From IMG/VR virus record IMGVR_UViG_3300024259_002152, positions 186,001 through 250,000 of that record: a DNA stretch of 64,000 nucleotides; one strand, given 5' to 3'. The notes beneath the pieces were generated by a model. It worked only from the letters and a program-made list of their open reading frames with translations. It did not search any database and was not told the origin of the DNA. The position numbers were made by a program, and so were the translations under genes. This document shows positions 22,765-59,459 of the stretch, piece after piece; the stretch's first letter is position 1, and the number at the start of each line of letters is the position of its first letter.

Positions 22765-22866
22765 GGAACAAAAGTTTTTTTAAGAATGTTATCATAGATG
22801 AAATTAATTAGAGATTTATACATGGGCGATACAAAATAAACAAAAATATTTTTAATGGAGAATAAA

Positions 22867-23661
22867 ATGCAAAAAGTGGGTATTATAGGTTATGGGATAA
22901 TAGGTCAAGCAGTAGCTAAGCTATTTACAGGCAAAGCACAGTTGTGTATATATGATTCTAATCCTAGAACTATTTTTAACACAGAAGAGCACAAAAAATC
23001 TATTAATAATTGTAATATAGCTTTTATATGCGTTCCTACTCCTCATAATCAATATGATGGTTTAGATATGTCCATTGTGGAGAGAGTGGTAAAAGAGTTG
23101 AATCCAGGAATATTTGTATGTTGTTCTGCTTTACAACCTGGCACAGCAGATAACTTAACAAAAGAATATAGAAAAAAAATAGTTGTTCAACCAGAATATT
23201 TTGGAGAGACTACCAATCATCCTCTTACTAACTTATCTCAAAGTCCATTTCTGATTTTAGGAGGAGAGAATAAAGATGTAGGTGAAGTTATAAGATTATA
23301 TCAAAAAGTATATAACGCGAGTGTGAGAATAAGAAAGGTAACAGCTTTAGAAGCAGAAGTGATCAAACTTTCAGAGAATAGAGCCATAGCATATAAAGTC
23401 GCTCAGTGTCAAGAACTATACGATGTTTGTCAAAAATCAGGGGTTGATTATGAAACTATTAGACAGGCAGTTTATGGCGATGACCCTAGGTTTAATTTGT
23501 GGTGGACTTTTGTATATGATGATAATAGGGGATTAAATTCTAAATGCATTCCTAAAGATGTTTATGGATGGCACAAATGGGCAGAAGATGCTGGGATAAA
23601 CCCAGAGCTTACCGGAAGTTTATTAGAATATAATAATACTTTGATAAAGAAAGATAAATAA
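22867..23661 (+). CDS. Short UDP-glucose/GDP-mannose dehydrogenase family protein 1 (divergent)
   Basis: IIGYGIIG, FICVPTP, QPEY, EVIKLSEN, SKCIPKD; no C-terminal domain. ATG 22867 has a GGAG SD (track start 22855). Confidence 0.75.
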   Translation: MQKVGIIGYGIIGQAVAKLFTGKAQLCIYDSNPRTIFNTEEHKKSINNCNIAFICVPTPHNQYDGLDMSIVERVVKELNPGIFVCCSALQPGTADNLTKEYRKKIVVQPEYFGETTNHPLTNLSQSPFLILGGENKDVGEVIRLYQKVYNASVRIRKVTALEAEVIKLSENRAIAYKVAQCQELYDVCQKSGVDYETIRQAVYGDDPRFNLWWTFVYDDNRGLNSKCIPKDVYGWHKWAEDAGINPELTGSLLEYNNTLIKKDK

Positions 23662-23663
23662 AT

Positions 23664-24512
23664 ATGAAAAATACAATCGGCGTGATTGGTTGCGGTTTTG
23701 TTGGAAAGGCGGTGACGAAAGGATTCGCGCAATTTTCGGACGTGAAGATATATGATATAGATGAGAAAAAATCAACCCACAATTTTGAAGAAGTAATAAG
23801 TTGTGAGTTTGTATTTTTATGTTTGCCAACTCCTATGATTTCCGCAGAAGGTGGAAAAACTAATTTAACTATATTTGAAAAATGTATTGCAGATATAGAT
23901 AATATTAAAGATAGAAATAAGGGCTCTATTTATATTATTAAATCTACAGTGCCAATAGGAACGACTAAAAGACTATCTGCACAATACCCACATATGCATT
24001 TAGTGCATTGTCCAGAATTTTTAACAGCTCGTTCCTATCTGATTGATTTTATTTGTCCATCTAGGAATATAGTTGGATGTGAAAATATATTTGTAGGGGG
24101 GAAAGTTAAAAGCTTGTTAGAAGATAGATTTCCAGGAACTCTATGTATAATGATGACATCTCAAGAGTCTGAAACAGTTAAATATATGTCAAATGCCTTT
24201 TTGGCAACCAAAGTTATGTTTTTTAACGAGATGAAATTACTAACTGATAAAAAGAATTTATCCTGGGACAAAATTTTAGAAGGAGTTATGAGTGATGGAA
24301 GAATAGGGACATCGCACTATCAAGTGCCAGGGCATGATGGGCAAATGGGATTTGGGGGTGTGTGTTTTCCTAAGGATATTAATTCTTTGATTGATACAAT
24401 GGAAAAGAGCGGTATTGATCCGATAGTTTTAAAGGCAGTGTGGGAACAAAATAAAAAGATCAGAAAAAATTGGGGTTGGGAAAATGATACTTCTGCTGTC
24501 ATGAAAGATTAA
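23664..24512 (+). CDS. Short UDP-glucose/GDP-mannose dehydrogenase family protein 2
   Basis: VIGCGFVG, LPTP, KSTVPIGT, CPEFL, ETVKYMSNAFLATKV, GFGGVCFPKD; ends soon after PKD. Confidence 0.88.
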   Translation: MKNTIGVIGCGFVGKAVTKGFAQFSDVKIYDIDEKKSTHNFEEVISCEFVFLCLPTPMISAEGGKTNLTIFEKCIADIDNIKDRNKGSIYIIKSTVPIGTTKRLSAQYPHMHLVHCPEFLTARSYLIDFICPSRNIVGCENIFVGGKVKSLLEDRFPGTLCIMMTSQESETVKYMSNAFLATKVMFFNEMKLLTDKKNLSWDKILEGVMSDGRIGTSHYQVPGHDGQMGFGGVCFPKDINSLIDTMEKSGIDPIVLKAVWEQNKKIRKNWGWENDTSAVMKD

Positions 24513-24520
24513 TAGTAAGT

Positions 24521-25360
24521 ATGCATTTAAACAGGAAGAAAATCAAACAAAATAAATTGAAGATTTCTCCTAGGGGAGGGAAAAAAAAGAAGATAAAAAT
24601 AGCTGATCCAAAACCAGTTGTTAGACCCGTCAAAAGATCTAAAAAGAAAAATAAACAATTAAGAATTAGTAAGACATCTGGTTTAAATAGTATAGATATT
24701 AAGAATTTTGGGGATAAGTCACTTTATAAACCAATTCGTGAATGGAAAAGCTTATTAGAAGGACAAGCAGCTTTTATATTGGGGAATGCTCCCAGCATAA
24801 CGAGACAGAATCTAGATATTTTGAATCCGTATTTTACGATAGGTGTTAATAGGATATTATATATTTTTACTCCGACTATATTGATTTGGCAAGATATTCA
24901 GATGTGGAATAGCGAAAAGAAAAAAATAGCTAATAATAAATCGTTAAAAATATGTAATAGCGTTAGTGATCCTCGTAAGGCATTTCTAAATTTTAAAGTT
25001 AAGGGTGGAAATTTTAAATTCGGGAATGATCCTTCCATATTGCATGGTACAGGGAATACTACAGCTTTAGCAGCTCAACTAGCTGTTAATTTAGGTTGTT
25101 CGGATATAATTTTATTAGGAACAGATTGTCAATATCAATCTGGAAAAACAGATTTTTATGGCAAGAATAAAGATCATAAATCATATACGTTAAAAATGTG
25201 TAACGTGGCTATGGAGTGGATGAGAGACAATTGTCCTATTCCTGTACATAATTGTAGTAAGAATAAGCTCTGGCCTGAAGAAAATATAGTAGATGTTATA
25301 AAAAAATTAGGCCCTAAGAAACTAAATAGAAAAGAATATATTAGAAAGTTTAAACGATAA
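24521..25360 (+). CDS. DUF115/MAF_flag10-like protein with Lys/Arg-rich N-terminus
   Basis: FILGNAPSI, TIGVNR, GNTTALAAQLAVNLGCSDIILLGTDCQY. Confidence 0.7.
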   Translation: MHLNRKKIKQNKLKISPRGGKKKKIKIADPKPVVRPVKRSKKKNKQLRISKTSGLNSIDIKNFGDKSLYKPIREWKSLLEGQAAFILGNAPSITRQNLDILNPYFTIGVNRILYIFTPTILIWQDIQMWNSEKKKIANNKSLKICNSVSDPRKAFLNFKVKGGNFKFGNDPSILHGTGNTTALAAQLAVNLGCSDIILLGTDCQYQSGKTDFYGKNKDHKSYTLKMCNVAMEWMRDNCPIPVHNCSKNKLWPEENIVDVIKKLGPKKLNRKEYIRKFKR

Positions 25361-25623
25361 TGTATGGAATAGATTTTAATAATCAATTAGTTGATTACTT
25401 ACTAGATGATGATAGAAAAATTCCTAAAGCACATCTAGAAGGGGTATGTAAAATCGAGCAAAAAGATAAAACATGTCGATTTATTGCTTTGTCAAAGATA
25501 GGATATGTGTGCATGAAAAAAAGTCCTGCTAAGGTTAAGCTAGATGAAATGGCAAAAGATGGAAATATGGTGGCACAGTCCGACAACTGCGAGGGGTTGG
25601 GAGATATATATGGTAAAAGTTAA
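25360..25623 (+). CDS. Small Cys-containing hypothetical protein
   Basis: 87-aa ORF coupled to both neighbours; four Cys (VCK, TCRF, VCMK, DNCEG). Confidence 0.6.
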   Translation: MYGIDFNNQLVDYLLDDDRKIPKAHLEGVCKIEQKDKTCRFIALSKIGYVCMKKSPAKVKLDEMAKDGNMVAQSDNCEGLGDIYGKS

Positions 25624-26473
25624 TAATAAAAAGACTTTAAAAGTGAAAAAGAAGACGGTAAACTTAAAAAGTAAAGCAGTTAAGAAGAAAGCAGTTAAGA
25701 AGAAAGCAGTTAAGAAGAAAGCAGTTAAGAAGAAAGCAGTTAAGAAGAAAGCAGTTAAGAAGAAAGCAGTTAAGAAGAAAGCAGTTAAGAAGAAAGCAGT
25801 TAAGAAGAAAGTAGTTAAGAAGAAAGCAGTTAAGAAGAAAGCAGTTAAGAAGAAAGCAGTTAAGAAGAAAGCAGTTAAGAAGAAAGCATTTAAGAAGAAA
25901 GCAGTTAAGAAGAAAGTAGTTAAGAAGAAAGTAGTTAAGAAGAAAGTAGTTAAGAAGAAAGCAGTTAAGAAGAAAGCAGTTAAGAAGAAAGCAGTTAAGA
26001 AGAAAGCAGTTAAGAAGAAAGCAGTTAAGAAGAAAGCAGTTAAGAAGAAAGCAGTTAAGAAGAAAGTAGTTAAGAAGAAAGTAGTTAAGAAGAAAGTAGT
26101 TAAGAAGAAAGCAGTTAAGAGAGTTGCTAAACAAAAGGCTGTTAAAAAGAAAACAACTAGGAAAAAGGAAGTAAAAAAGAAAGCTAGAAAAAGAGTTTCT
26201 AGAAAGAAAATATTAATGGAAGATATTTATTCGATTATCAATAAGGCTCAATTTGGTAAAAGAAAAATAACATTTGTGACTGATCTGGCTGATGCTCCAA
26301 CCATAGAGAACAATATTAAAGATGTGGAGTTAAAATACGATAAAGTAGAGATGAAAACACAAGTAGTTTTTACTTTATACCCTAATGAGAAGAAATATGA
26401 TGAAGTAATGGATACTATACATTTTGATATTATGGACGATGAAATACCTGATATTGGACAAATTTTTGGATAA
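25610..26473 (+). CDS. Histone H1-like lysine-rich repeat protein with acidic C-terminal domain
   Basis: (A/V)VKKK pentapeptide x29 followed by a unique ~115-aa tail; ATG 25610 with GGAG SD. Confidence 0.75.
   Translation: MVKVNNKKTLKVKKKTVNLKSKAVKKKAVKKKAVKKKAVKKKAVKKKAVKKKAVKKKAVKKKAVKKKVVKKKAVKKKAVKKKAVKKKAVKKKAFKKKAVKKKVVKKKVVKKKVVKKKAVKKKAVKKKAVKKKAVKKKAVKKKAVKKKAVKKKVVKKKVVKKKVVKKKAVKRVAKQKAVKKKTTRKKEVKKKARKRVSRKKILMEDIYSIINKAQFGKRKITFVTDLADAPTIENNIKDVELKYDKVEMKTQVVFTLYPNEKKYDEVMDTIHFDIMDDEIPDIGQIFG
25676..26120 (+). repeat. Tandem 15-bp repeat G(C/T)AGTTAAGAAGAAA, 29 full units plus a partial unit
   Basis: Directly visible; variants are GCA/GTA and one GTT>TTT; no spacers. Confidence 0.98.
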
Positions 26474-26525
26474 GTCCTTTGTTAATAAGTACTTATGTTA
26501 ATTTTCTATATTGTTAAAAAAACAT

Positions 26526-26553
26526 TTGAAAGTGAAAATGAATACTTTATAAT
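26526..26553 (+). promoter_or_regulatory. Sigma70-type promoter, motif copy 1
   Basis: TTGAAA-GTGAAAATGAATACTT-TATAAT (16-nt spacer), intergenic. Confidence 0.7.
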
Positions 26554-26621: not shown

Positions 26622-27509
26622 GTGAAAGATGAACAATTATTAAATAATTCCCTCTTATATCCTGATTTTCTTTGTGAGTCAGGTAGCCATTTATATGGAA
26701 TGGTTACGCCTACATCAGATTATGATTTGAGGGGATTTGTATTTCCTCCATTTTCATATCTTGTTGGGATTAAGAAATTTGAGTGCCAAGAAATGGAAGG
26801 AGATAAGAAAATTTATAGTGCTGCTCATTTTCTTAGATTGGCAATGAAGGGAGATCCTCAATGTTCGGAAAGTTTTTTTGCAAATAAAGAGAATATTGTG
26901 CAATGTTCGGAATTGGGCAAAGAAATAATGGATCTAAAGGATGATATTATTAGTAATGCCATTTATGGAAGAATCATGGGATATAGTACAGGAGAATGGC
27001 GTAAGGCAATGGCGGTTAAATTAGTTTCGACTAAATTTAATAAAACTAAAAAAGAGATTATAAATGATGTGCGTAATCATTGGACTCTTAATAAAGAGAA
27101 TATGGATAGGATTATCGAAATTCTCGATTCCGTAGATAAGAAAAAATGTGTTTCTTCAATGACTGGTCTTGGGGCTAAAAGAAAGGCAGATATTGAGCAA
27201 TATGGTTTTTGCAGGAAGAGTGCTGCCCATTCGATTCGTCTTGTAAGGCAGTTGACAGAGCTTATGGAAACGGGAACGATGACATTTCCTCGCCCCGATA
27301 AGGATGTGCTTTTAGATATCAGGAACGGTAAATACACAAAAGAAGATATGGAAGTAATGCATGATGAATCTGTTGCCCAAGCAGAAAGAATGCGTGATAA
27401 GTCTGTCCTTCCTGATAGGCCTAATGAAAAAAGAGTTTGGAAAAAGTATTCAGAGTTAGTTGCAAATGTTATCCAGAAGGATGTAAAATTTTTGCAACTT
27501 GTACAATAA
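26622..27509 (+). CDS. DNA polymerase beta-superfamily nucleotidyltransferase (phage type)
   Basis: ESGSHLYGMVTPTSDYDLRG (GS...DxD), KSAAHSIRL, LLDIRNGKY. Confidence 0.85.
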   Translation: MKDEQLLNNSLLYPDFLCESGSHLYGMVTPTSDYDLRGFVFPPFSYLVGIKKFECQEMEGDKKIYSAAHFLRLAMKGDPQCSESFFANKENIVQCSELGKEIMDLKDDIISNAIYGRIMGYSTGEWRKAMAVKLVSTKFNKTKKEIINDVRNHWTLNKENMDRIIEILDSVDKKKCVSSMTGLGAKRKADIEQYGFCRKSAAHSIRLVRQLTELMETGTMTFPRPDKDVLLDIRNGKYTKEDMEVMHDESVAQAERMRDKSVLPDRPNEKRVWKKYSELVANVIQKDVKFLQLVQ

Positions 27510-35598: not shown

Positions 35599-36057
35599 AT
35601 GGCAAAGTTTCAATTATGGTCAAGAGATGAGTATGGACAAGGTAGCATTATAATGACCTCAGAAGATATAGATGAGGTTATTAAGAGAGGTAAGCAGGAA
35701 GTTACTGATCTTAATGTTCAAAATGCTTTAACTTCTACTGATAGAGAAAATAACTGGGAAGCATATTTTGTAAATGTCAAAACTTCGGCAAAACGTTCTC
35801 AAACAAAATATGCTTATGGATCAACTGATGTTCATACTAAGGATAGGGTTTATGCTATTGCAGATAGTGGTGTAAAATCTATTATACTTTCGGAAGTTCC
35901 GAAAGCAGTTGTTGAGATTTATCTTGGTAATATTTCTACGAAGAGAAAAGAGGAGAAAGATTGGATCGGGACAGATTTGAGAGCCAGACCAATTGACAAT
36001 GTAGATCATCCTGATTTACAAGGTAAGACATTGTTTTTTGTTAAGAAGGTTGGATAA
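35599..36057 (+). CDS. Hypothetical protein
   Basis: 152-aa ORF with SD, coupled to the next gene. Confidence 0.6.
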   Translation: MAKFQLWSRDEYGQGSIIMTSEDIDEVIKRGKQEVTDLNVQNALTSTDRENNWEAYFVNVKTSAKRSQTKYAYGSTDVHTKDRVYAIADSGVKSIILSEVPKAVVEIYLGNISTKRKEEKDWIGTDLRARPIDNVDHPDLQGKTLFFVKKVG

Positions 36058-36473
36058 TGGCAAAAAAATTTGATAGTGTAAAAGATAGTGGAGCGCGTGA
36101 GGAATTCTCTACAGGAGCCAGGAGAGATACGCAGGAAGGTAAGGGACGTTTTGACTTGTTGCCTATTAATGCGATGTTTCGGTTGTCTCGTCATTTTGAG
36201 AACGGAGCCGTGAAATATGGAGATTCAAATTGGCTCAAGGGTATACCCTTAAAGAGGTATTTAGATTCCCTATTAAGGCATACTTTCAAATTTGCGGGAG
36301 GTTTAGAAGGGGAAGATCATCTGTGTGCGATTATCTGGAACGCTTGTTGTTTATTGGAAACTCAAGAACTTATTAGACAAGGAAAATTGCCAAAAGAACT
36401 TGATAATTTGCCAGATCCCGTTTTGGACCCAAAGGAATTTAATGAGGAGATAAGAGATTCTGATTCCAAGTAA
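36057..36473 (+). CDS. dATP/dGTP diphosphohydrolase-domain protein (DUF5664)
   Basis: KDSGAREEFSTGARRD..GKGRFDLLP, GAVKYGDSNWLKGIP, YLDSLLRH, EDHL..IIWNA. Confidence 0.88.
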   Translation: MAKKFDSVKDSGAREEFSTGARRDTQEGKGRFDLLPINAMFRLSRHFENGAVKYGDSNWLKGIPLKRYLDSLLRHTFKFAGGLEGEDHLCAIIWNACCLLETQELIRQGKLPKELDNLPDPVLDPKEFNEEIRDSDSK

Positions 36474-38296: not shown

Positions 38297-39406
38297 GTGA
38301 AAGTTGAAACCCCCTTATCTCTCAAGTATCGTCCTAAAAAATTATCTCAGGTAGTAGGGCAACCAGTAGTAGTTAGAGCATTTACTAATGCTTTCAAAAT
38401 AAATAATCTGCATCATGCTTATATTCTAGCAGGTCAATTTGGTTGCGGAAAAACGACAGTTGCTAGAATTGTTGCGGCAACTGAAAATTGTTTAGAGAAT
38501 AAAAAAGATCCATGTGGTAAGTGTAATAATTGTCAAGAAATTTTTGCTGGGAAATCCTATGAAGTTCTTGAGATAGATGCGGGAAGTGAAGGTAAGGTTG
38601 ATAATATCAGAGCATTACACAAATCTTTACATCAATGTCCCGTAGAATGCAAAACAAAATATGTTATTATTGATGAGGCACATTCTTTAACAGGTTCAGC
38701 AGCAGAAGCGTCTTTAAAGATGATAGAGGAACCTCCTCCTATGGTTAGATTTATCTTAGCCACTACTGAGCCACAGGCGTTTAAGGAAACCATTCATAGT
38801 CGTTGCATTATGTGGAGTTTCAACAAGGTTGGTAGGGCTGATATATTCAGTCATTTGCAAAATATTTCTCAGCAGGAGCAAATTGGTTGTGATGATAAAA
38901 CTCTTCAATTAATTGCCAGATATTCCAAAGGGTCAGTGAGAAATTCTTTACAACATCTTCAGAAAATTATGAATTATGTGGGAGATGATTCAATAACATA
39001 TGAATCTGCGGTAGAAGCTCTTGGAGTGATAGATGATGTATTATATTTTGATCTTTTCGATGGCATTATAGCAAAAGATGCCATGAAATGCTTTATGACT
39101 ATTAACAAGATATTTTGCGATGGTAAAGAAGCTAAATTGGTTATAGATGGAGTTTATGAGCATTTGAATAATTTGCTGGTTACGAGGACATGTCGAAAAG
39201 ATCTAGATTCTTTTGATTTTACACAGGAAGAAGCTAAGAGATATATACATCAAAACTCTACAATAGCTAAGAGTGGTGGAGATGATATACTAAGAATGAT
39301 GAACCTATTAAGCAATGTCTCATTTGGGGTAGAGTATAGTTTAAATCCAGCACAATTGCTGAATAAGTTTGCGGTAGAATCTATCCGTATGTTTGCTAAA
39401 AGATAG
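38297..39406 (+). CDS. dnaX: DNA polymerase III gamma/tau-like clamp-loader ATPase (gamma-length)
   Basis: KYRP...VVGQ, HAYILAGQFGCGKTT, PCGKCNNC, EIDAGS, IIDEAH, FILATTE, IHSRC. Confidence 0.92.
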   Translation: MKVETPLSLKYRPKKLSQVVGQPVVVRAFTNAFKINNLHHAYILAGQFGCGKTTVARIVAATENCLENKKDPCGKCNNCQEIFAGKSYEVLEIDAGSEGKVDNIRALHKSLHQCPVECKTKYVIIDEAHSLTGSAAEASLKMIEEPPPMVRFILATTEPQAFKETIHSRCIMWSFNKVGRADIFSHLQNISQQEQIGCDDKTLQLIARYSKGSVRNSLQHLQKIMNYVGDDSITYESAVEALGVIDDVLYFDLFDGIIAKDAMKCFMTINKIFCDGKEAKLVIDGVYEHLNNLLVTRTCRKDLDSFDFTQEEAKRYIHQNSTIAKSGGDDILRMMNLLSNVSFGVEYSLNPAQLLNKFAVESIRMFAKR

Positions 39407-39427: not shown

Positions 39428-39474
39428 TTTCAATCATATGTCGATATAAATGTGTGATTTATATATGATTGAAA
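39428..39474 (+). promoter_or_regulatory. Inverted repeat/hairpin abutting the sigma-factor SD
   Basis: TTTCAATCATAT (39428-39439) / ATATGATTGAAA (39463-39474) is a perfect 12-bp IR; inner ATAAAT/ATTTAT stem; contains TCGATATAAA. Confidence 0.6.
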
Positions 39475-39483
39475 GGAGTTCAT

Positions 39484-40203
39484 ATGGGTAAACGCAGACC
39501 CGTTAAGCGGATCTTTGGCCCACTTGAAAAACTAGAATATGAAGATTTAGTAGATGTTGTAAGAGGTAGATCGAGAACTAAAAGGAAAAATAACGCTTAT
39601 AATGAGATAGAGAAAAGAATAAAAGTCAAAGTATTTTATATTACAAGGCAATTTTATATTCCTGGTCTTAATTTTGATGATATATTGCAAGAAGCTTTGT
39701 TTGCTTTAAGATTTAAAGCTATTCCTGATTATGATAAAGATAAAGGACATGGTGATCGACCTTATCCTTTTGACAAATTCGCTATGCTTTGTATCAGGAG
39801 GCATCTATCAACTTTATTAAAAAGTAGTTTTCGTAATAAAGAGAAGGCCCTAAATACTAGTTTTTCTTTGGATCAAGATAGAAGTACCCACGATGACGAA
39901 AATTTATATTTAGTAGATATTCTTTCTGTCACAAAAGGTTCGTTAGTTGATAAGGTTGGACAGCAAGAGTATTATCGTAATTTGATAGAGAGATTATATA
40001 AAAGACTCTCCAAGTTGGAGAAAAATGTCTTTGTTTTGTATACTTGTAGATATTCATATGATGAAATAACTGATAAAATTAATAAGTTTTATAAGTCCCG
40101 AGGTAGAAAAAGAAAAGTAAATGTTAAAAGTGTGGACAACGCTTTGAGTCGAATTAAAATAAAAGCTAAAGAGATTTTTGATAAATATGATGGAGAGATA
40201 TAG
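39484..40203 (+). CDS. Sigma-70 family (SigH-like) RNA polymerase sigma factor
   Basis: FYIPGLNFDDILQEAL, FAMLCIRRHLSTLLK...KEKALN.S.SLD, SYDEI, KSVDNALSRIK; AGGAG SD before ATG 39484. Confidence 0.85.
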   Translation: MGKRRPVKRIFGPLEKLEYEDLVDVVRGRSRTKRKNNAYNEIEKRIKVKVFYITRQFYIPGLNFDDILQEALFALRFKAIPDYDKDKGHGDRPYPFDKFAMLCIRRHLSTLLKSSFRNKEKALNTSFSLDQDRSTHDDENLYLVDILSVTKGSLVDKVGQQEYYRNLIERLYKRLSKLEKNVFVLYTCRYSYDEITDKINKFYKSRGRKRKVNVKSVDNALSRIKIKAKEIFDKYDGEI

Positions 40204-40308: not shown

Positions 40309-41616
40309 ATGATTTTCGAAGTTAATAGAGAAGAATTCACAAGGGCTATTAAACCCGCTGTAGAGATTGCAACCAAAAACACACTCAAGGATTTCAAATA
40401 TGAGAATTTATTAACGATAAAAGCTGAACAGGATCAGGTTGTTTTGGTTTCTTATGGAGGCACATTAAGTATTGTCGCTCCTATATCAGGAAATAATTTT
40501 GGAGCACTAGATTATAGTTGCGAAGAAGAAGGGCAAACTACTGTTTATGCTGATGACTTATTGACATTTATGCAATCTCTTCCTAAAAGCTACGACAAAG
40601 TAAAGATTTCATTAGTGTCTAATCAGCTTAAATTATCTTCCGCTTCAAAGAAAACTGACGGCAAGAAGGCTAGTTCAGAACGATCTATGCCTACGGTGAC
40701 TGATATTGTTCGTCTTCCAAAAATTGGGACAACTTTTGACCAAGATATTGAATTGGATAGAGAGGTTTTTGTAAATGGTATTGATAGCGTCCTGTTTGCT
40801 CCAGCATACGAAGAAAAATATTTTTCTTATATGTGTATGTTATTTGAAGCAAGTTCTGGCACAGATCAAGAGATGAGATTTTCAGCAGGTTCAGGAGGAA
40901 GGTTTGCGATTAAATCTGTTAAAGGCAAGAATATAGTGCTGAATCAGAATGAAGCGAAGATGATTTTTCCAAAGAACAGTCTTTCTTCTATATTTAAGAT
41001 TTTATCAAGCGCAACAGAATCTTCCATTCGTATTAAATCTATAGGCGTAGATCAAACAAAAAATATTTCTGAGCAAATTCTGGTTGAGTGTGATGGAATG
41101 ACTATATGTGTATTTGGATTAGAGCATTTTACTAAATATCCTGATTTAAGTAAAATTTTAGCACATCAATATTCTAATAGAGTTTATAGTAGTTTGGAAG
41201 ATTGGCAGTCTATTGAGAAGACAATTGAGGGAACACGACACAGATGGAATGATAGTATTCATAATACGGAGATCATCATTGAAGAGAGTGATGAAGTTTT
41301 TAAAGTAACTCCTAAAACTCCTCATGCGAGTCCTACATTTATTGGAATGGTAGATACAAATGATTGTATTATCAAGGGTGATAAGATATGGTTCTGTTGT
41401 AATTCTGATTACCTGAGAGAGATGGTTGTTCAAGGTGGGGGTAAGGGTCGTATTCAGTTGAATTTTGAAAGTCAGTCGATATTGGAAGGGATAACAGATG
41501 ACAAACAGGCTCAGAAAATGATGAAACCAGTCCTGGTCAAATTTCCAGAAAATGTTGATGACGCCAAAAATACTGTTGATAACTTTTATATGTTCTTCTC
41601 AATTTCTACTAAATAA
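40309..41616 (+). CDS. dnaN: Divergent DNA polymerase III beta sliding clamp
   Basis: MIFEVNREEF N-terminus, KYPDLSKI and CNSDYL motifs at DnaN-like positions, size and context next to dnaX. Confidence 0.65.
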   Translation: MIFEVNREEFTRAIKPAVEIATKNTLKDFKYENLLTIKAEQDQVVLVSYGGTLSIVAPISGNNFGALDYSCEEEGQTTVYADDLLTFMQSLPKSYDKVKISLVSNQLKLSSASKKTDGKKASSERSMPTVTDIVRLPKIGTTFDQDIELDREVFVNGIDSVLFAPAYEEKYFSYMCMLFEASSGTDQEMRFSAGSGGRFAIKSVKGKNIVLNQNEAKMIFPKNSLSSIFKILSSATESSIRIKSIGVDQTKNISEQILVECDGMTICVFGLEHFTKYPDLSKILAHQYSNRVYSSLEDWQSIEKTIEGTRHRWNDSIHNTEIIIEESDEVFKVTPKTPHASPTFIGMVDTNDCIIKGDKIWFCCNSDYLREMVVQGGGKGRIQLNFESQSILEGITDDKQAQKMMKPVLVKFPENVDDAKNTVDNFYMFFSISTK

Positions 41617-46034: not shown

Positions 46035-48548
46035 GTGAATAAAGATTTTATCTTATCGGTTTTGAAGAAAGTGAGATTTTTGTTTCCTTTCGTGGTGGAC
46101 TCACCTCATGAGGTTCTTGGGGAGTTGGCGCAAATAATTCCATCTCGATATATGATATTTCCTTGTGATATTATAGATCTTAGACAGTTTATTAGAGAGG
46201 ATAAGATTTCATCTTCGAATCCTATACTGTTTTTTTCTCAAAAATTTGCAGATAAATATTTGAAAGAATATTCAGTGTTTTTAGTTCTTGACTCTCATGT
46301 AGATGTTGTGAATGATCTATACGGAGGTGTTCAAGTTAATTATTGCGATGAACTCCCTTTGTCTCATCTACTTGTTAGAATCCTTATTAACGAACCATCT
46401 GCAAATAACTCTTTCGATGTTGTTAAAAACTTAATGGAAGAATTTAATTTAGGGGTAGAATGTTTGGTATCAAATAGTGTTCCTGGTATTTCTGGTCCTA
46501 GCAAAAAATTGTCATATATAATAGAACCTAAAAAGGCACAAAGAACTATAGGTGTTCCTTCAGACCTCCCTCTTACTCCAAAAGAAAACGATATATTTGA
46601 GTTCTTGAGACAAGTTAAAAAAGATTACAATCTTGATATTCAAATGAGGGTGGCAGGAGGATGGGTCAGAGATAAGATTCTTGGTAAAGAAAGTGATGAT
46701 ATAGATATAGCTGTAGATATGCCAGGTTATGATTTTGCTAAATTGGTGGCCCAAGCTGCCTTTAAGAGCAATATATCTCATGACCCTAAAGCGTATAATG
46801 TTAGTTTAGACAAAGATGCAGACCCAGCCACGAGAGTTGATGATGACAATCTGATGGTAGGGGCTGTAGATTTATTTGGTCAGAAAATAGAATTTGTTCC
46901 AATGAGAACAGAGCACTATCCTGATCCTCAAAGCAGAAAACCTAAAATTACCACAACGAATGATCCAAGAGAAGATGTGAAAAGAAGAGATCTTACAATC
47001 AATTCTATTTATTATAATATAGATACTGGTCAAGTAGATGATTTTGTAGGAGGAGTAGAGGATTTAGGTTTGGAAAGCGGAAAAATGATATTAAGAACAC
47101 CAGATGATGCCAAAAAAACTTATGAAGAAGATCCATTAAGGTTGCTGAGAGCTTTGCGCTTTCATAGTCGTTATCCCAATAGCGAATTAGATCCAGATAT
47201 AATCAAATCAATGTCAGACCCAGACATACAAGAATCTTATGTCAAGAAAGTTGCTGCGTCAAGAGCTGGACCTGAGATAATGAAAATGTTAGTGGGGGAT
47301 AATCCTACTGCATCTTTAAAACTATTATTTGAGAGCGGTTTATATAGGAAAGTTTTTGATGTTCCTGCAATGGGGAATATTAATCCTGATGGTATAGAGA
47401 TGGATCAAAAATCTCCTTATCACAAATATAGTTTATTAGATCATACGATAGAAGTGGTGTCTAATCTTAATAGTATTATGAAAGAGAATGAAGAGCCCGA
47501 TGATATGAGAGGACTTATGAATCTTGCTGCTGTTTTTCATGATTTCGGAAAAATGGATAACAAAGTTGCAAGACCTCATAAACGTCCAAGAGTTCCTGGA
47601 CATACTACTTATGTTGGGCACGAAAGAAGCTCAGAAGATATGGCAGAAGCCATATTGAAATCTATTAACGTGCCAAAAGAAAAAAGAAATTTAGTTAATA
47701 CTGTTATTAAAACACATATGTATCCTCATGATGCTTCGGATTGGAGTAGTAAAAATAAAGGTCCAGGTAATTTTATTGAAAAATTAAAAATAAAAGGCAA
47801 AGGTGGAGTAGATGATTTGTGGAAGTATGTGTTTTATCATGGTCAAGCTGATGCCATGTCGTCTAATCCTGAGACATATGATGAGCAAAAATATAATCAA
47901 GGAAAAGAGTGGTTTGAGCAATATCGTTCTGAACCATCGACAGAATTTACCAGATTTCAAGGAACGTTAATAGATGGTAACGTAGTGGATAATCTCAGGC
48001 AGCAAATAGAGCAGCAGAGACAAGTTCGTATCAGAAAAAACATTATCAGTGATGCTTTACATTTTATTTTACAACAGCAATATACAGGTAATATTGATAT
48101 GTCTTTTGCTTCATTGCCAGAAGGAGCAGATAGAGAGAAAGCTATGAATAAGTCTATTAATGATGCTACTAATAAAGTCAAAGGGTGGATGCTTAATGTG
48201 CATAATAAATATTTAGAACCACCTAAGGGAGGACAGGTTATGGGGTCTAATTGGTTTAAAAAAGTAAAAACTGCACAAGTAGCTGCTCTATCAGGAGATG
48301 TGCAAACTCAAGATCCAGAGATAAAGAAAGGTCCAAAAGAAGCTCTTCCAAAATATCAAGTTGGTATGAAGGTAAGAGATAGAAGAAATTCTGTATCTCA
48401 ACAACAGACCTATGGGGTGGTAGAAGCAATAAAAGGTAATAAAATGAAGATAGTTTGGAATCCTGATAGTAAAGAAAAAAGACAAGAAGAAGTTGTCGAT
48501 ATGGTGGAAAATACTGAAATTTTATCTTTAATTGTTGCGGAGGTATAA
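46035..48548 (+). CDS. cca: Class II CCA tRNA nucleotidyltransferase with HD domain and N- and C-terminal extensions
   Basis: RVAGGWVRD...DDIDIA, EFVPMRTE, DVKRRDLTINS, EDPLRLLRALRF, LLDHT, FHDFGK, YVGHE. Confidence 0.9.
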   Translation: MNKDFILSVLKKVRFLFPFVVDSPHEVLGELAQIIPSRYMIFPCDIIDLRQFIREDKISSSNPILFFSQKFADKYLKEYSVFLVLDSHVDVVNDLYGGVQVNYCDELPLSHLLVRILINEPSANNSFDVVKNLMEEFNLGVECLVSNSVPGISGPSKKLSYIIEPKKAQRTIGVPSDLPLTPKENDIFEFLRQVKKDYNLDIQMRVAGGWVRDKILGKESDDIDIAVDMPGYDFAKLVAQAAFKSNISHDPKAYNVSLDKDADPATRVDDDNLMVGAVDLFGQKIEFVPMRTEHYPDPQSRKPKITTTNDPREDVKRRDLTINSIYYNIDTGQVDDFVGGVEDLGLESGKMILRTPDDAKKTYEEDPLRLLRALRFHSRYPNSELDPDIIKSMSDPDIQESYVKKVAASRAGPEIMKMLVGDNPTASLKLLFESGLYRKVFDVPAMGNINPDGIEMDQKSPYHKYSLLDHTIEVVSNLNSIMKENEEPDDMRGLMNLAAVFHDFGKMDNKVARPHKRPRVPGHTTYVGHERSSEDMAEAILKSINVPKEKRNLVNTVIKTHMYPHDASDWSSKNKGPGNFIEKLKIKGKGGVDDLWKYVFYHGQADAMSSNPETYDEQKYNQGKEWFEQYRSEPSTEFTRFQGTLIDGNVVDNLRQQIEQQRQVRIRKNIISDALHFILQQQYTGNIDMSFASLPEGADREKAMNKSINDATNKVKGWMLNVHNKYLEPPKGGQVMGSNWFKKVKTAQVAALSGDVQTQDPEIKKGPKEALPKYQVGMKVRDRRNSVSQQQTYGVVEAIKGNKMKIVWNPDSKEKRQEEVVDMVENTEILSLIVAEV

Positions 48549-57019: not shown

Positions 57020-57385
57020 ATGGAGTATCAAACAATGACGTTTAAAAATATATGTAAAAATTATTTTGATAGGAATAAAAAATATCTGCTATCAGATCAC
57101 ATTATTTACGAGATGAATGGGGCTGTGTTATGTAAGACAAGCAATGCTATTTTTGATTTTCATGAAATAGCAATAAAAAATATTATAGATTATTGCAAAG
57201 AGGCAGGATATGAAAAAATAGATAAAGTAGTTTTTGTTTCTTCTTATGATGTAGATATTGTTGAAGATGCTCCCAAATTACAACTAAAAATGCAAGCTGA
57301 TTCTAAAATAAGTATAATAAAAGAAAATGACAGATTTATAGCAATGGTTTGTATTGGAGAATGGGTGGAGATTAATGAAAAATAA
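57020..57385 (+). CDS. Hypothetical protein
   Basis: 121-aa ORF. Confidence 0.55.
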   Translation: MEYQTMTFKNICKNYFDRNKKYLLSDHIIYEMNGAVLCKTSNAIFDFHEIAIKNIIDYCKEAGYEKIDKVVFVSSYDVDIVEDAPKLQLKMQADSKISIIKENDRFIAMVCIGEWVEINEK

Positions 57386-59459
57386 TATAAAACAGAGTAT
57401 ATTCTTAGTGGGTTTTTTAATCATTTTTATTTCTTTTGTGCTGTCATGGAGGGTATTGACTTATAAAAAACTAGAAAATACTATTGTATTGAATACTCAA
57501 GAGAGGCTAGTGACTGTCGTTGAATCGGAATCAGTAATTATCAGTCAATTGATAAATAATTATTTTGTAGAGGACGATTGGTTGGCATTTATGAATGATT
57601 TCAATGGGAGAACGGGAAAAATAGGAAAAGATGGATATATGTGGATAATAGATGATAAGGGAATAGTAAAATATCATCCATATCAACAATACATCGGTAA
57701 AAGTGCAATTATTTTAAGAAGGAATATATTGGATGATGGAGGTTGTAAGAATTTTGAAGATATTATTGGTAGAATGAAAAGAGGAGAAAAAGGATATGGA
57801 GATTATACATCTATTTGGAGCAATAAAGATCAAAAAAAAGTGAAAAAAATAGTAGCATTTTGCCCTCTTGAAGTAAATAAAAACAAATGGTCGATTGCTG
57901 TTTCTATTGGTTATGTGGAGATCTCGTCTCCTATAGTCATAAATAAATATATGGATATTTTCGGCGTAATTGTTATATTTATTTTTACTTGTATTGTGGG
58001 TTATATTTTTTATAAGAAACAAAAGAAAATAGATGAAACAAGTATATTTGTTCAAACAGAACACGAGTTAAGGGAAAGTAAAGATTTTATAAGAAGAGTT
58101 ATTGATACTATTCCTCTTTTAGTTTTTGTAAAAGATTATGAGGGACATTACATATTAGCTAATCAAACATTGGCAGACATGCTAGGCGTAACAGTAGAAA
58201 AAATAGAGGGGAAAAAAGACATCGATTTCATGGGTAGCACTGAGGTTGAGGAAGCAAATCGGTATACAGATGCAGATAAAAAAGTCATTACAACTCAGGA
58301 AGAGATGCATATTTATGAAGAAAAATCTACGGACTCTAAGGGCAATATCGTATATTTTAACACAATAAAATATCCTTTAACTATTGGGGAGAAATCTGAT
58401 TACGTTCTAGGAGTATCTACTAATATCACAGAAAGAAAAATGGCAGAAGAGAAAATAGAGTCTTTGGCAAAATTTCCAGGAGAAAATAGCAATCCAGTGT
58501 TGAGAATAGATCATGATGGCAAACTTATTTATGCTAATAATGCTAGTGAAGCTTTATTAGAACTATGGGGTAGTAACGTGGGAGGATATGTGCCATCATC
58601 TTTTACTCATATAATAAAAGAGTGTTTGTTAGAGCATATAGTAAAAACTAAAGATATAAAAATTAATGGTAATATTTTGACATTGAGTTTCACTCCTATC
58701 CGTGATGATTATATTAATATTTATGGATCAGATATCACAGACATAAAAGCAGCAGAAGAAGAATTGAGAAAAGCAAACGAGGGGTTAGAGGAATTTGCTT
58801 ATATTACTTCTCATGATTTACAAGAACCATTAAGAACTGTTTTTGCATATTCTCAGTTATTGAAAAATTCTTGTTACGATAGATTGAGTGAAGAAGAACA
58901 AAAATTTCTTAACTATTTAATGAGCGGCAGCCAACGGATGAAGATACTTGTAAAAGAGTTGCTTGATTACTCAAGAGTTGGGAAAAGTCGAGATGCATCA
59001 GGAATTGAAAGAGTGAATATAGGGATGTTATTGGATGAGATCTTTGAAGACTCTCAAGTATATATTAAAGAAACAAATGCTATTATTACTGTTCAAAAAC
59101 ATATGCCTACAATTATTGGTTCTCGTTTGAGAATAAAACAGTTATTTCATAATCTAATTAGTAATGCATTGAAATTTAGAGGACAACAACAACCTATCAT
59201 AAAAATAGGTTATCGCGAGTTAGATGATGCAAATTATTGGGAGTTTTATGTTGAAGATAATGGGATAGGAATTGATCCTCAATTTCATGATCGTATTTTT
59301 GGTATTTTTAAAAGGTTGTATTCTAGAGAAGAATATCCTGGAACAGGTATAGGATTAGCTTTGTGTAAAAAGATTGTAGAAACTCATGCAGGTGATATAT
59401 GGGTAGAGTCTGAAGCGAATAAAGGGACTATAATCTATTTTACAATTGCTAAATCATAA
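57375..59459 (+). CDS. Membrane sensor histidine kinase (TM-Cache-TM-PAS-PAS-HisKA-HATPase)
   Basis: Two hydrophobic segments; GYMWIIDDKGIVKYHP; EEFAYITSHDLQEPLR; NLISNALKF; DNGIGID; GTGIGLALCKKIV. Confidence 0.92.
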   Translation: MKNNIKQSIFLVGFLIIFISFVLSWRVLTYKKLENTIVLNTQERLVTVVESESVIISQLINNYFVEDDWLAFMNDFNGRTGKIGKDGYMWIIDDKGIVKYHPYQQYIGKSAIILRRNILDDGGCKNFEDIIGRMKRGEKGYGDYTSIWSNKDQKKVKKIVAFCPLEVNKNKWSIAVSIGYVEISSPIVINKYMDIFGVIVIFIFTCIVGYIFYKKQKKIDETSIFVQTEHELRESKDFIRRVIDTIPLLVFVKDYEGHYILANQTLADMLGVTVEKIEGKKDIDFMGSTEVEEANRYTDADKKVITTQEEMHIYEEKSTDSKGNIVYFNTIKYPLTIGEKSDYVLGVSTNITERKMAEEKIESLAKFPGENSNPVLRIDHDGKLIYANNASEALLELWGSNVGGYVPSSFTHIIKECLLEHIVKTKDIKINGNILTLSFTPIRDDYINIYGSDITDIKAAEEELRKANEGLEEFAYITSHDLQEPLRTVFAYSQLLKNSCYDRLSEEEQKFLNYLMSGSQRMKILVKELLDYSRVGKSRDASGIERVNIGMLLDEIFEDSQVYIKETNAIITVQKHMPTIIGSRLRIKQLFHNLISNALKFRGQQQPIIKIGYRELDDANYWEFYVEDNGIGIDPQFHDRIFGIFKRLYSREEYPGTGIGLALCKKIVETHAGDIWVESEANKGTIIYFTIAKS

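What the first reader, a model, noticed from the sequence alone, without database searches (positions are those of the whole stretch)
25610..26473. Histone-H1-like (AVKKK)29 protein
Seen: a ~150-aa near-perfect pentapeptide array with three Lys in every five residues, then a basic linker and an acidic unique tail. Established: Lys/Ala-rich repeat proteins (Chlamydia Hc2, Pseudomonas AlgP, eukaryotic H1 tails) condense DNA. Inference: a phage-encoded DNA-condensing or host-nucleoid-silencing protein. It ends the operon that begins with the glycan genes.
Basis: partly seen in the sequence, partly recalled or inferred. Interest (0 to 1): 0.6.

Follow-up and report, generated by a model that had tools for sequence, protein, structure and literature searches.

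The report
Polylysine clamp-tail protein of huge phages
The lysine-rich repeat protein is real, but it is not a histone relative: it is the longest member of an unnamed family of small huge-phage proteins whose conserved tail tip looks like the tip by which the phage's own DNA polymerase should hold the sliding clamp.

Summary
Window 25610-26473 (+) is a 287-aa ORF with 29 in-frame copies of a 15-bp unit (21 AVKKK, 7 VVKKK, 1 AFKKK), a basic linker and an acidic 87-aa C-terminus. The window lies in a 350,866-bp phage contig.

The histone reading holds only in part. No H1, Hc1 or Hc2 model matches. The conserved parts are a 55-aa alpha/beta domain, a roughly 29-aa acidic disordered tail, and an invariant tip (DDEIPDIGQIFG here; DEIxExGQ[IL]F family-wide). 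About 120 representative clusters carry them, and every context with enough DNA to judge is a phage-like contig (133-548 kb where long). The basic arm varies from 0 to 200 aa (median 31) and grows by independent tandem duplications.

The gene always overlaps or abuts an upstream 82-103-aa four-Cys gene (18 contexts).

The phage's DnaE-type polymerase ends ...ETIDIFG, at the column of E. coli's clamp-binding QADMF. I therefore propose a DNA-binding arm tethered to the phage's beta clamp.

Copy number is unsettled. Near-identical genomes give 10, 12 or 29 units, and six contigs break inside the array.

The parts
25360..25623 (+). Upstream partner gene, 87 aa, with invariant His25, Cys30, Cys39, Cys51 and Cys77. 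Its stop overlaps the target's start by 14 nt.
   Evidence: 70 homologues; the invariant columns. A homologue sits directly upstream, overlapping or abutting, in all 18 contexts where the upstream DNA or gene calls could be seen. No Pfam, NCBIfam, PADLOC or PDB-sequence match.
25610..26473 (+). Target gene, 287 aa: polybasic arm, small alpha/beta domain, acidic tail with a conserved tip.
25610..25675 (+). Conserved N-terminal lead (MVKVNNKKTLKVKKKTVNLKSK).
   Evidence: The alignment of close homologues shows M[IV]KxKxKKTxKVKxKVV conserved.
25676..26110 (+). 29 tandem 15-bp units (AVKKK, VVKKK, AFKKK): the expanded part of the basic arm.
   Evidence: Alleles of 10 and 12 units exist in near-identical genomes, and six contigs break here.
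26111..26209 (+). Non-repetitive basic linker (AVKRVAKQKAVKKKTTRKKEVKKKARKRVSRKK).
26210..26389 (+). Conserved domain of about 55-60 aa, alpha-beta-alpha-beta-beta.
   Evidence: AlphaFold2 on a 67-sequence alignment gives mean pLDDT 84, and 92-97 over the domain. The best structural matches are a P. gingivalis protein of unknown function (Z 8.3), YlmH (7.4), KhpB (7.2), and R3H, Smr, IF3-C, Alba and SepF at 5-6.8. This is a common two-layer sandwich. No sequence match in the PDB.
26390..26470 (+). Acidic tail (pLDDT 57-67, no secondary structure) that ends in the invariant tip DDEIPDIGQIFG (26435-26470).
   Evidence: D110, E111 and F119 are invariant and G116 nearly so across 67 diverse members.
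26526..26553 (+). Promoter-like motif TTGAAAGTGAAA-N-TATAAT that opens the next unit (RlaP nucleotidyltransferase gene, 26622-27509).
   Evidence: The same motif follows the gene's stop in L002, L005, L007, L008, L011 and L013.
40309..41616 (+). The phage's own beta sliding clamp (435 aa), the proposed docking partner of the tip.
   Evidence: PHROG 947, E 2.4e-10. Homologues carry PF00712 and PF02767. hhalign against E. coli DnaN gives probability 92%, E 5.7e-7, and the conserved AGSGGRFA segment aligns with the E. coli pocket wall TDGHRLAV.
38297..39406 (+). Clamp-loader gamma/tau-like subunit. It shows that the phage runs its own clamp system.
   Evidence: PF13177, E 1.4e-36; PHROG 5846, E 7e-60.

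Best explanation
The ORF is a real gene. It encodes the longest known member of an unannotated family of small proteins found in phage-like contigs, many of them huge (133-548 kb).

Shown here. The family has four parts: (1) an N-terminal poly-Lys/Arg arm of very variable length; (2) a conserved alpha-beta-alpha-beta-beta domain of about 55 aa; (3) an acidic, disordered tail of about 29 aa; and (4) an invariant hydrophobic tip at or one residue from the C-terminus. The gene is always translationally coupled to a small four-Cys protein gene. In this phage the arm has been enlarged to 200 aa and +114 net charge by a recent tandem amplification of one 15-bp unit.

Inferred mechanism. The arm binds DNA non-specifically through charge. 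The tip (...GQIFG) docks in the peptide-binding pocket of the phage's own beta sliding clamp. The phage's DnaE-type polymerase should dock there too: its C-terminus (...ETIDIFG) lies at the position of E. coli's clamp-binding motif QADMF. On this reading the protein is a clamp-tethered, DNA-coating or DNA-anchoring accessory factor that acts on replicating phage DNA. It may work together with, or under the control of, its four-Cys partner. It would not be a free-standing histone. The length of the arm, and so the strength of DNA binding, is set by slippage.
For: Family and architecture. A profile search with the C-terminal 87 aa found 123 representative proteins, 2 of them obvious false hits. 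Lengths are 84-167 aa as a rule, always with the domain at the C-terminus. The arm has a median of 31 aa and +13.5 charge; the tail is about 28 aa and -9. Q47, D71, D110, E111 and F119 are invariant.

Fold. The domain is modelled at pLDDT 92-97 and the tail at 57-67.

Gene pair. The 4-Cys homologue lies upstream in every context, including members at about 30% identity (hhalign probability 99.6-99.9%).

Clamp link.
- G000 encodes a clamp loader and a beta clamp and a DnaE-like polymerase (PF07733, PF17657, PF14579).
- Aligned with E. coli DnaE, four phage polymerases stop exactly at the QADMFG column: ETIDIFG, ESVDMFE(DLF), ESVDIFG and PSDDMFE. Two more end VDLFA and ADIFG.
- In the same six genomes the target's homologues end GQIFG (four genomes), GQIFP (one) and GEIFD (one).
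- Only 3 of 486 plus-strand ORFs in G000 end [ILMV]F[GAPDE], and the polymerase and the target are two of them.

Literature.
- The LF dipeptide anchors clamp-binding motifs in subsite I, and the flanks are acidic or a free C-terminus (PMC11139829).
- T4 gp43, gp33 and gp55 share interchangeable acidic-hydrophobic C-terminal clamp epitopes, and gp33 has a highly variable N-terminal third (PMC2988020).
- Mu C uses clamp-binding motifs (PMC12867686).

Arm evolution. Independent arrays occur in relatives: 15 bp x 11.7 in L007, 15 bp x 3.7 in L012 and 39 bp x 2.5 in L006.
Against: - No binding was tested.
- The tip lacks the Gln at motif position 1 and has Gly at position 2. The phage polymerases also lack that Gln.
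- The shared part is only three to four residues, so a chance resemblance is possible.
- The tip could instead bind the 4-Cys partner, the nearby topoisomerase or something else.
- The gene is not in the units driven by the TTGAAA-GTGAAA promoter class, which precedes the clamp gene. It closes a 63-kb block that lacks this motif, so it may be expressed at a different time from the clamp.
- In distant members the pair sits beside other genes, such as methyltransferases, so the replication neighbourhood is not universal.
- DNA binding by the arm is inferred from composition only. The fold class (R3H, KhpB, IF3-C-like) would suit RNA equally well.
Confidence: 0.4

Rival explanations
1. The protein is a histone-H1, Hc2 or AlgP-like bulk DNA condenser: it compacts phage DNA for packaging, or it coats and silences the host nucleoid. 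The Lys repeats would be the working part and the C-terminus an accessory.
For: It has 119 Lys in 287 aa and +114 charge in the arm. Repeat-number polymorphism occurs as in other Lys-repeat nucleoid proteins. The gene closes a long block that lacks the early-type promoter motif, which would fit late expression. H1-like proteins have been proposed for other aquatic jumbo phages (PMC12619734).
Against: No H1, Hc1 or Hc2 model matches. Most family members have an arm of only about 30 aa and some have none, so condensation cannot be the conserved function. The best-conserved elements are the tail tip and the partner gene. One molecule would neutralise only about 57 bp of DNA.
Confidence: 0.2
2. 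The acidic tail and tip form a docking or auto-inhibitory element for a partner other than the clamp. Candidates are the co-translated 4-Cys protein, the type IA topoisomerase of the conserved neighbourhood, or the protein's own basic arm folding back, as in SSB, T7 gp2.5 or HMGB1.
For: The gene pair is obligate, with overlapping start and stop. The block of pair, 134-aa gene, 71-aa gene and topoisomerase is kept in four IMG/VR relatives, two of which also have the RlaP gene. In typical members the arm (+13.5) and the tail (-9) nearly balance. DDEIP recalls the SSB tip DDDIPF (my own knowledge, not tested).
Against: The phage's own SSB ends ...GIDDSDFDAI, unlike the target tip. The correlation between arm charge and tail charge is weak (rho -0.19, p 0.03, not corrected for phylogeny). 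The topoisomerase is not nearby in distant members.
Confidence: 0.2
3. The protein is an RNA- or ribosome-directed factor. An IF3-C, R3H or KhpB-like domain with a basic arm would bind RNA, for example in translation take-over or RNA repair.
For: The structural neighbours are mostly RNA binders (YlmH, KhpB, R3H, IF3-C, ribosomal S8). An RlaP 'RNA repair pathway' nucleotidyltransferase gene follows it in most loci, and a CCA-adding-type enzyme lies at 46035-48548.
Against: Z scores of 5-8 are in the range of common folds, and no R3H signature is present. RlaP starts a separate promoter-led unit and is missing in L006 and L014. The resemblance of the tip to the polymerase tip would remain unexplained.
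Confidence: 0.1
4. The array is an assembly artefact or a DNA-level element (iterons or an origin), and not a meaningful protein repeat.
For: Six of 11 contigs break in the array and three lengths are reported. The region borders replication genes.
Against: The frame is open through every allele. The unit is a multiple of three. Homologues at 30-85% identity keep a basic arm without keeping the DNA repeat. The variant units (one GCATTT, isolated GTA) cannot be invented by an assembler. The GC skew shows no turn here.
Confidence: 0.03

Closest known systems
T4 gp33 and gp55, and phage Mu C: small phage proteins that ride the sliding clamp
   Same: All are small proteins. All have an acidic and hydrophobic epitope at the extreme C-terminus that resembles the tip of the phage's own polymerase. 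gp33 also has a highly variable N-terminal third. The phage or its host supplies the clamp as a platform (PMC2988020, PMC12867686).
   Different: There is no sequence or fold similarity, and no PHROG hit. gp33 binds the RNA polymerase flap and is not polybasic. T4's clamp is a PCNA-like trimer, whereas here it is a beta-type clamp. Clamp binding is only inferred here.
Lys-rich repeat nucleoid proteins: Chlamydia Hc2 and Hc1, the eukaryotic H1 C-terminal tail, Pseudomonas AlgP
   Same: Both have short tandem Lys/Ala(Val) repeats, a variable repeat number and expected charge-driven DNA binding.
   Different: No homology: HC2 scores 9-16 bits against a cut-off of 40, and H1 and Hc1 give no hit. 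There is no winged helix. The acidic tail, the conserved tip and the obligate partner gene are not features of those proteins. The arm is short or absent in most relatives.
Basic low-complexity tails of actinobacterial DNA enzymes (for example the PAKKA repeats of Mycobacterium smegmatis Ku, PMC3553676)
   Same: A lysine-rich repeat tail acts as an add-on that modulates DNA binding, and its length differs between lineages.
   Different: In those proteins the tail is fused to an enzyme or to Ku. Here it sits on a separate small adaptor protein.
SSB, T7 gp2.5 and HMGB1-type acidic C-terminal tails
   Same: A nucleic-acid binder is followed by a disordered acidic tail with a terminal hydrophobic residue, which recruits partners or folds back on the basic part (my own knowledge).
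   Different: There is no OB fold or HMG box. The tip differs from the phage's own SSB tip.
'Histone H1-like (PF07432)' proteins reported in moraphages (PMC12619734)
   Same: Both are in large aquatic phages, and both have been proposed to compact DNA.
   Different: Those proteins match Pfam Hc1; this protein does not. The moraphage genomes reach 307 kb, whereas this lineage reaches 548 kb and uses DnaE and a beta clamp.

Membership tests
Linker histone H1/H5 | A winged-helix globular domain (Pfam PF00538) with a Lys-rich C-terminal tail | tested here: not met
   No hit, even at E<=10. The globular part is alpha-beta-alpha-beta-beta and lies C-terminal to the Lys tract.
Chlamydial Hc2 (PF07382) | A match to the HC2 model above the gathering score (40 bits) | tested here: not met
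   9.3 bits for the 29-unit protein and 16.5 bits for the 10-unit allele. These are compositional matches only.
Hc1 / bacterial H1-like (PF07432) | A match to the Hc1 model | tested here: not met
   No hit at E<=10.
Beta-clamp-binding proteins | A short motif close to QL[SD]LF with a hydrophobic-Phe pair at positions 4-5 | tested here: inconclusive
   The tip is I-G-Q-I-F(-G). Positions 4-5 fit. Gln at position 1 is absent, as it is in the phage polymerases (T-I-D-I-F). Consensus taken from PMC9690074 and PMC11139829.
Beta-clamp-binding proteins | The motif lies in a disordered stretch or at the terminus, with acidic flanks or a free carboxylate | tested here: met
   In the last 29 residues pLDDT is 57-67 with no secondary structure, and there are 9 D+E against 2 K+R. 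The motif is at, or one residue from, the C-terminus in the family.
Beta-clamp-binding proteins | The same kind of motif on the cognate replicative polymerase | tested here: met
   The phage DnaE homologues end at the column of E. coli QADMFG, with [ST][IV]D[IM]F[GE]. The target ends Q-I-F-G.
Beta-clamp-binding proteins | Physical binding to the clamp pocket | not testable with these tools
SSB-type C-terminal tip | An acidic tip D-D-D-[IL]-P-F with Phe as the last residue | tested here: not met
   DDEIP is followed by DIGQIFG. The phage's own SSB ends DDSDFDAI. The consensus is from my own knowledge.
T4 gp33-type late co-activator | Homology to gp33, or binding to the RNA polymerase flap | tested here: not met
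   No PHROG family matches the protein. Flap binding is not testable.

The most novel reading that the evidence does not exclude
Huge phages carry a 'clamp-delivered linker histone'. A polylysine protein is loaded onto freshly replicated phage DNA by docking on the phage's own beta clamp through the same C-terminal epitope as the polymerase. It is regulated by a dedicated metal-binding partner, and its DNA grip is tuned in nature by slippage of a 15-bp repeat. This would be a bacteriophage counterpart of replication-coupled chromatin assembly, or of T4's clamp-coupled late switch.
Probability: 0.15. Interest if true: 0.8.

Novelty: new variant of a known kind. Interest (0 to 1): 0.6.

Why it matters
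- The family, the fold and the obligate 4-Cys partner have no name in Pfam, PHROGs, NCBIfam, PADLOC or the PDB. They recur in about 120 sequence clusters, and all contexts that could be judged are phage-like contigs of 133-548 kb where long.
- If the tip binds the clamp, the bacterial 'tool-belt' gains a new kind of client: a polycationic DNA binder. That would give a direct route to asking how very large phage genomes are handled during replication.
- The natural series of arm lengths (0 to 200 residues; 10, 12 and 29 units within one phage population) is a ready-made experiment on how charge length affects function.
- A practical point: the array breaks short-read assemblies in more than half of the samples that hold this phage.

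Tried and rejected
Neither expression nor copy number could be checked in reads.
- Complex prediction. There is therefore no verdict on binding.
- The fold search 'atlas' library is not installed.

Searches that gave nothing useful
- Pfam, PHROGs, NCBIfam and PADLOC for the target and its partner.
- PDB sequence profiles.
- BFVD viral folds.
- The protein atlas.
- blastn and tblastn against deposited phages.
- Genome contigs.
- The one metagenome DNA scan returned only the window's own contig.
- Sheath, terminase and HK97-capsid Pfam models found nothing in the 350,866-bp contig, so the gene could not be placed relative to structural genes.

Ideas considered and dropped
- T4-type prohead-protease cleavage at ILME|D: the -3 position is not conserved (L, S, Y, F, C).
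- SSB-tip mimicry: the phage's own SSB tip is different.
- Charge compensation between arm and tail: only a weak correlation.
- The array as iterons or an origin: no conservation at the DNA level and no skew change.
- The alternative start at 25544: not supported by homologues.

The first structure model, built on 6 sequences, was poor (pLDDT 50) and was replaced by the 67-sequence model.

Full report
1. What is there

The window is bases 186,001-250,000 of a 350,866-bp IMG/VR virus contig (JGI Ga0233437_1000033). It has 33% G+C, nearly all genes lie on one strand, and CheckV estimates 73% completeness.

The ORF 25610-26473 (+) starts at an ATG behind a GGAG and gives 287 aa. Tandem Repeats Finder reports a 15-bp array at 25664-26120 with 30.4 copies, 97% matches and no indels. 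In frame there are 29 units at 25676-26110: 21 AVKKK, 7 VVKKK and 1 AFKKK, all with the same codons. A non-repetitive basic linker follows (26111-26209), and then an 87-aa acidic C-terminus (pI 4.4).

2. Copy number

Eleven contigs carry the identical upstream 87-aa protein.
- Five of them run through the array. They give 29 units (the window's own contig), 12 units (a 326,829-bp JGI contig) and 10 units (two independent assemblies).
- The 10-unit allele is 7 GCA + 3 GTA, which equals the last block of the window's array. Its flanks are 99.97% identical to the window.
- Six contigs stop inside the array, after 0, 1, 1, 3, 7 and 7 units.
- Two of those six show an eighth GCA-type unit, which the 10-unit allele lacks.

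The locus is therefore length-polymorphic, beyond what short reads can resolve, or both. The count of 29 is a property of this assembly. Its first run of nine identical units (135 bp) could itself be collapsed. The reads tools could not be used.

3. A family defined by the C-terminus, not by the repeat

No Pfam, PHROG, NCBIfam or PADLOC model matches. HC2 reaches only 9-16 bits against a cut-off of 40.

A word search restricted to the C-terminus found 23 homologues of 157-192 aa. An exhaustive profile search with a clean C-terminal alignment (A2) found 123 representatives, of which 2 are obvious false hits. Members are typically 84-167 aa. They have:
- an N-terminal K/R-rich arm (median 31 aa, range 0-200);
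- a conserved core (MEDIYxIINKVQ...ENIxKD..L.Y.K..KT...F...P);
- an acidic stretch of about 28 aa with about -9 net charge;
- a terminal motif DEIxExGQ[IL]F, followed by zero or one residue.

The window's protein is the longest by a factor of about two. Relatives carry their own, unrelated tandem arrays: 15 bp x 11.7, 15 bp x 3.7 and 39 bp x 2.5. The arm therefore grows repeatedly by slippage.

4. Fold

With 67 sequences AlphaFold2 gives mean pLDDT 84, with 92-97 over an alpha-beta-alpha-beta-beta domain. The last 30 residues are unstructured at pLDDT 57-67.

Structural neighbours are a P. gingivalis protein of unknown function (Z 8.3), YlmH (7.4), KhpB (7.2), and R3H, Smr, IF3-C, Alba and SepF domains (5-6.8). 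Foldseek finds nothing below E 0.01. This is a common two-layer sandwich, frequent among nucleic-acid binders, and it does not identify a function.

5. Context

In 18 contexts the gene is directly preceded by a small ORF of 82-103 aa whose stop overlaps or abuts its start. These contexts are the window, nine contigs found by protein identity, five IMG/VR records of 133-548 kb, and three contigs of distant members. In the two distant loci with DNA the upstream ORF is a clear homologue (hhalign probability 99.6-99.9%). That protein has invariant His25, Cys30, Cys39, Cys51 and Cys77 and no known relatives.

Upstream of the pair lie sugar-pathway genes in close relatives but not in distant ones. 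Downstream, in the IMG/VR relatives, lie an RlaP nucleotidyltransferase gene (not always), a 134-aa gene, a 71-aa gene and a Toprim/Topoisom_bac topoisomerase gene.

A promoter-like motif, TTGAAA(N0-1)GTGAAA...TATAAT, occurs 6 times in the window where 0.1 is expected. It occurs 20 times in the contig, always on the plus strand. One copy begins 53 nt after the target's stop, here and in at least six relatives. None occurs in the 63 kb before it. The next unit, and the clamp gene, have this promoter type and the target does not.

6. The clue to mechanism

The contig encodes a gamma/tau-type clamp loader (38297-39406) and a beta clamp (40309-41616). The clamp is supported by PHROG 947, by homologues carrying PF00712 and PF02767, and by hhalign against E. 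coli DnaN at 92% probability. In that alignment the family's most conserved segment, AGSGGRFA, lies on the E. coli pocket wall TDGHRLAV.

I scanned all 486 plus-strand ORFs of the contig for C-termini like the target's. Three end [ILMV]F[GAPDE]:
- the target;
- an unknown 1002-aa ORF;
- a 657-aa DnaE-type polymerase (PF07733, PF17657, PF14579), which ends ...ETIDIFG.

Aligned with E. coli DnaE, this polymerase and three relatives stop exactly at the column of the internal clamp-binding motif:

E. coli: ...AIGQADMFGVL...
Phages...GVETIDIFG...IESVDMFE(DLF)...GIESVDIFG...GVPSDDMFE

Two further relatives end VDLFA and ADIFG. In the same six genomes the target's homologues end GQIFG (four genomes), GQIFP (one) and GEIFD (one).

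The literature supports reading this as a clamp-binding tip. The hydrophobic-Phe pair is the anchor of clamp-binding motifs. Their flanks are acidic or a free C-terminus, and position 1 need not be Gln (PMC11139829, PMC9690074). T4's polymerase, gp33 and gp55 share interchangeable acidic-hydrophobic C-terminal clamp epitopes (PMC2988020). Mu C uses clamp-binding motifs (PMC12867686).

I therefore propose that the tip docks on the phage clamp and the basic arm holds DNA. This rests on motif resemblance and analogy only.

Electrostatic nucleic-acid binding by the arm remains the natural inference. The extreme arm of this phage might add a condensing effect. However, the family's conserved function cannot lie in a part that most members have in a 30-residue version or lack altogether. 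The protein is also not a member of the H1, Hc1 or Hc2 families. The rivals still open are: the tip binds the 4-Cys partner or the topoisomerase; the tail folds back on the arm; the target is RNA; or the protein is a late, virion-associated condenser.

8. Novelty

This is an unannotated family and gene pair of a poorly sampled huge-phage lineage. The best match to any deposited phage polymerase is 35% identity. The kind of part is known: a Lys-rich repeat arm and an acidic tail with a docking tip. The combination, the partner gene and the possible clamp link are new.

Noticed in passing
window 26526, 27930, 40239, 42952, 59510, 63474 (+); G000 genome-wide: Promoter-like motif TTGAAA(N0-1)GTGAAA, in five of the six window copies followed by TATAAT at sigma-70 spacing. 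There are 6 in the window (0.1 expected) and 20 in the contig, all on the plus strand. None lies between G000 149,344 and 212,526. This is probably one temporal promoter class of this phage.
   Followed up: partly
window 39469-40203 (+): A 244-aa ORF with a weak Sigma70_r2 hit (E 0.0028) sits between the clamp-loader and clamp genes. The layout recalls T4, where late transcription is coupled to the clamp.
   Followed up: no
window 57354-59459 (+): A complete sensor histidine kinase (sCache, PAS, HisKA, HATPase_c) is encoded by the phage.
   Followed up: no
window 36057-36473 (+) and 46035-48548 (+): A dATP/dGTP diphosphohydrolase N-terminal domain protein (PF18909, E 8e-19) and an 837-aa PolyA_pol/CCA-adding-type enzyme with an HD domain. 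The first may hint at non-standard nucleotide metabolism.
   Followed up: no
G000:C1:25243-28251 (outside the window; L030): A 1002-aa ORF with no Pfam or PDB-sequence match ends ...RDFDDFFDNLFE. It is the third ORF in the contig with an acidic and hydrophobic C-terminus like the polymerase and the target. It is a candidate further clamp client.
   Followed up: partly
L011 / G002 (IMGVR_UViG_3300033145_003233, 547,943 bp): NCBI holds this related contig as a 'Candidatus Asgardarchaeia archaeon' MAG protein record. The contig carries DnaE, a beta clamp and the same promoter motif, so the label looks like a binning artefact.
   Followed up: no
L022-L025 (G001) and L020/L024 (G003): The DnaE-type polymerase gene is split into two or three pieces in two related phages, which suggests intervening elements such as inteins or homing-endonuclease insertions.
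   Followed up: no
G000:C1:143722-144498 (outside the window; L016): An anti-Pycsar Apyc1-like metallo-beta-lactamase-fold protein (PF23023, 58 bits against a cut-off of 50).
   Followed up: no
window 22855-24512 (+): Two adjacent, short (268 and 282 aa) UDP-glucose/GDP-mannose dehydrogenase-like paralogues. Each covers only the N-terminal and central domains.
   Followed up: no
window 26470-26496: A near-palindrome (ATAAGTCCTT / AAGTACTTAT) lies right at the target's stop codon, upstream of the promoter-like motif. No T-tract terminator is evident.
   Followed up: no
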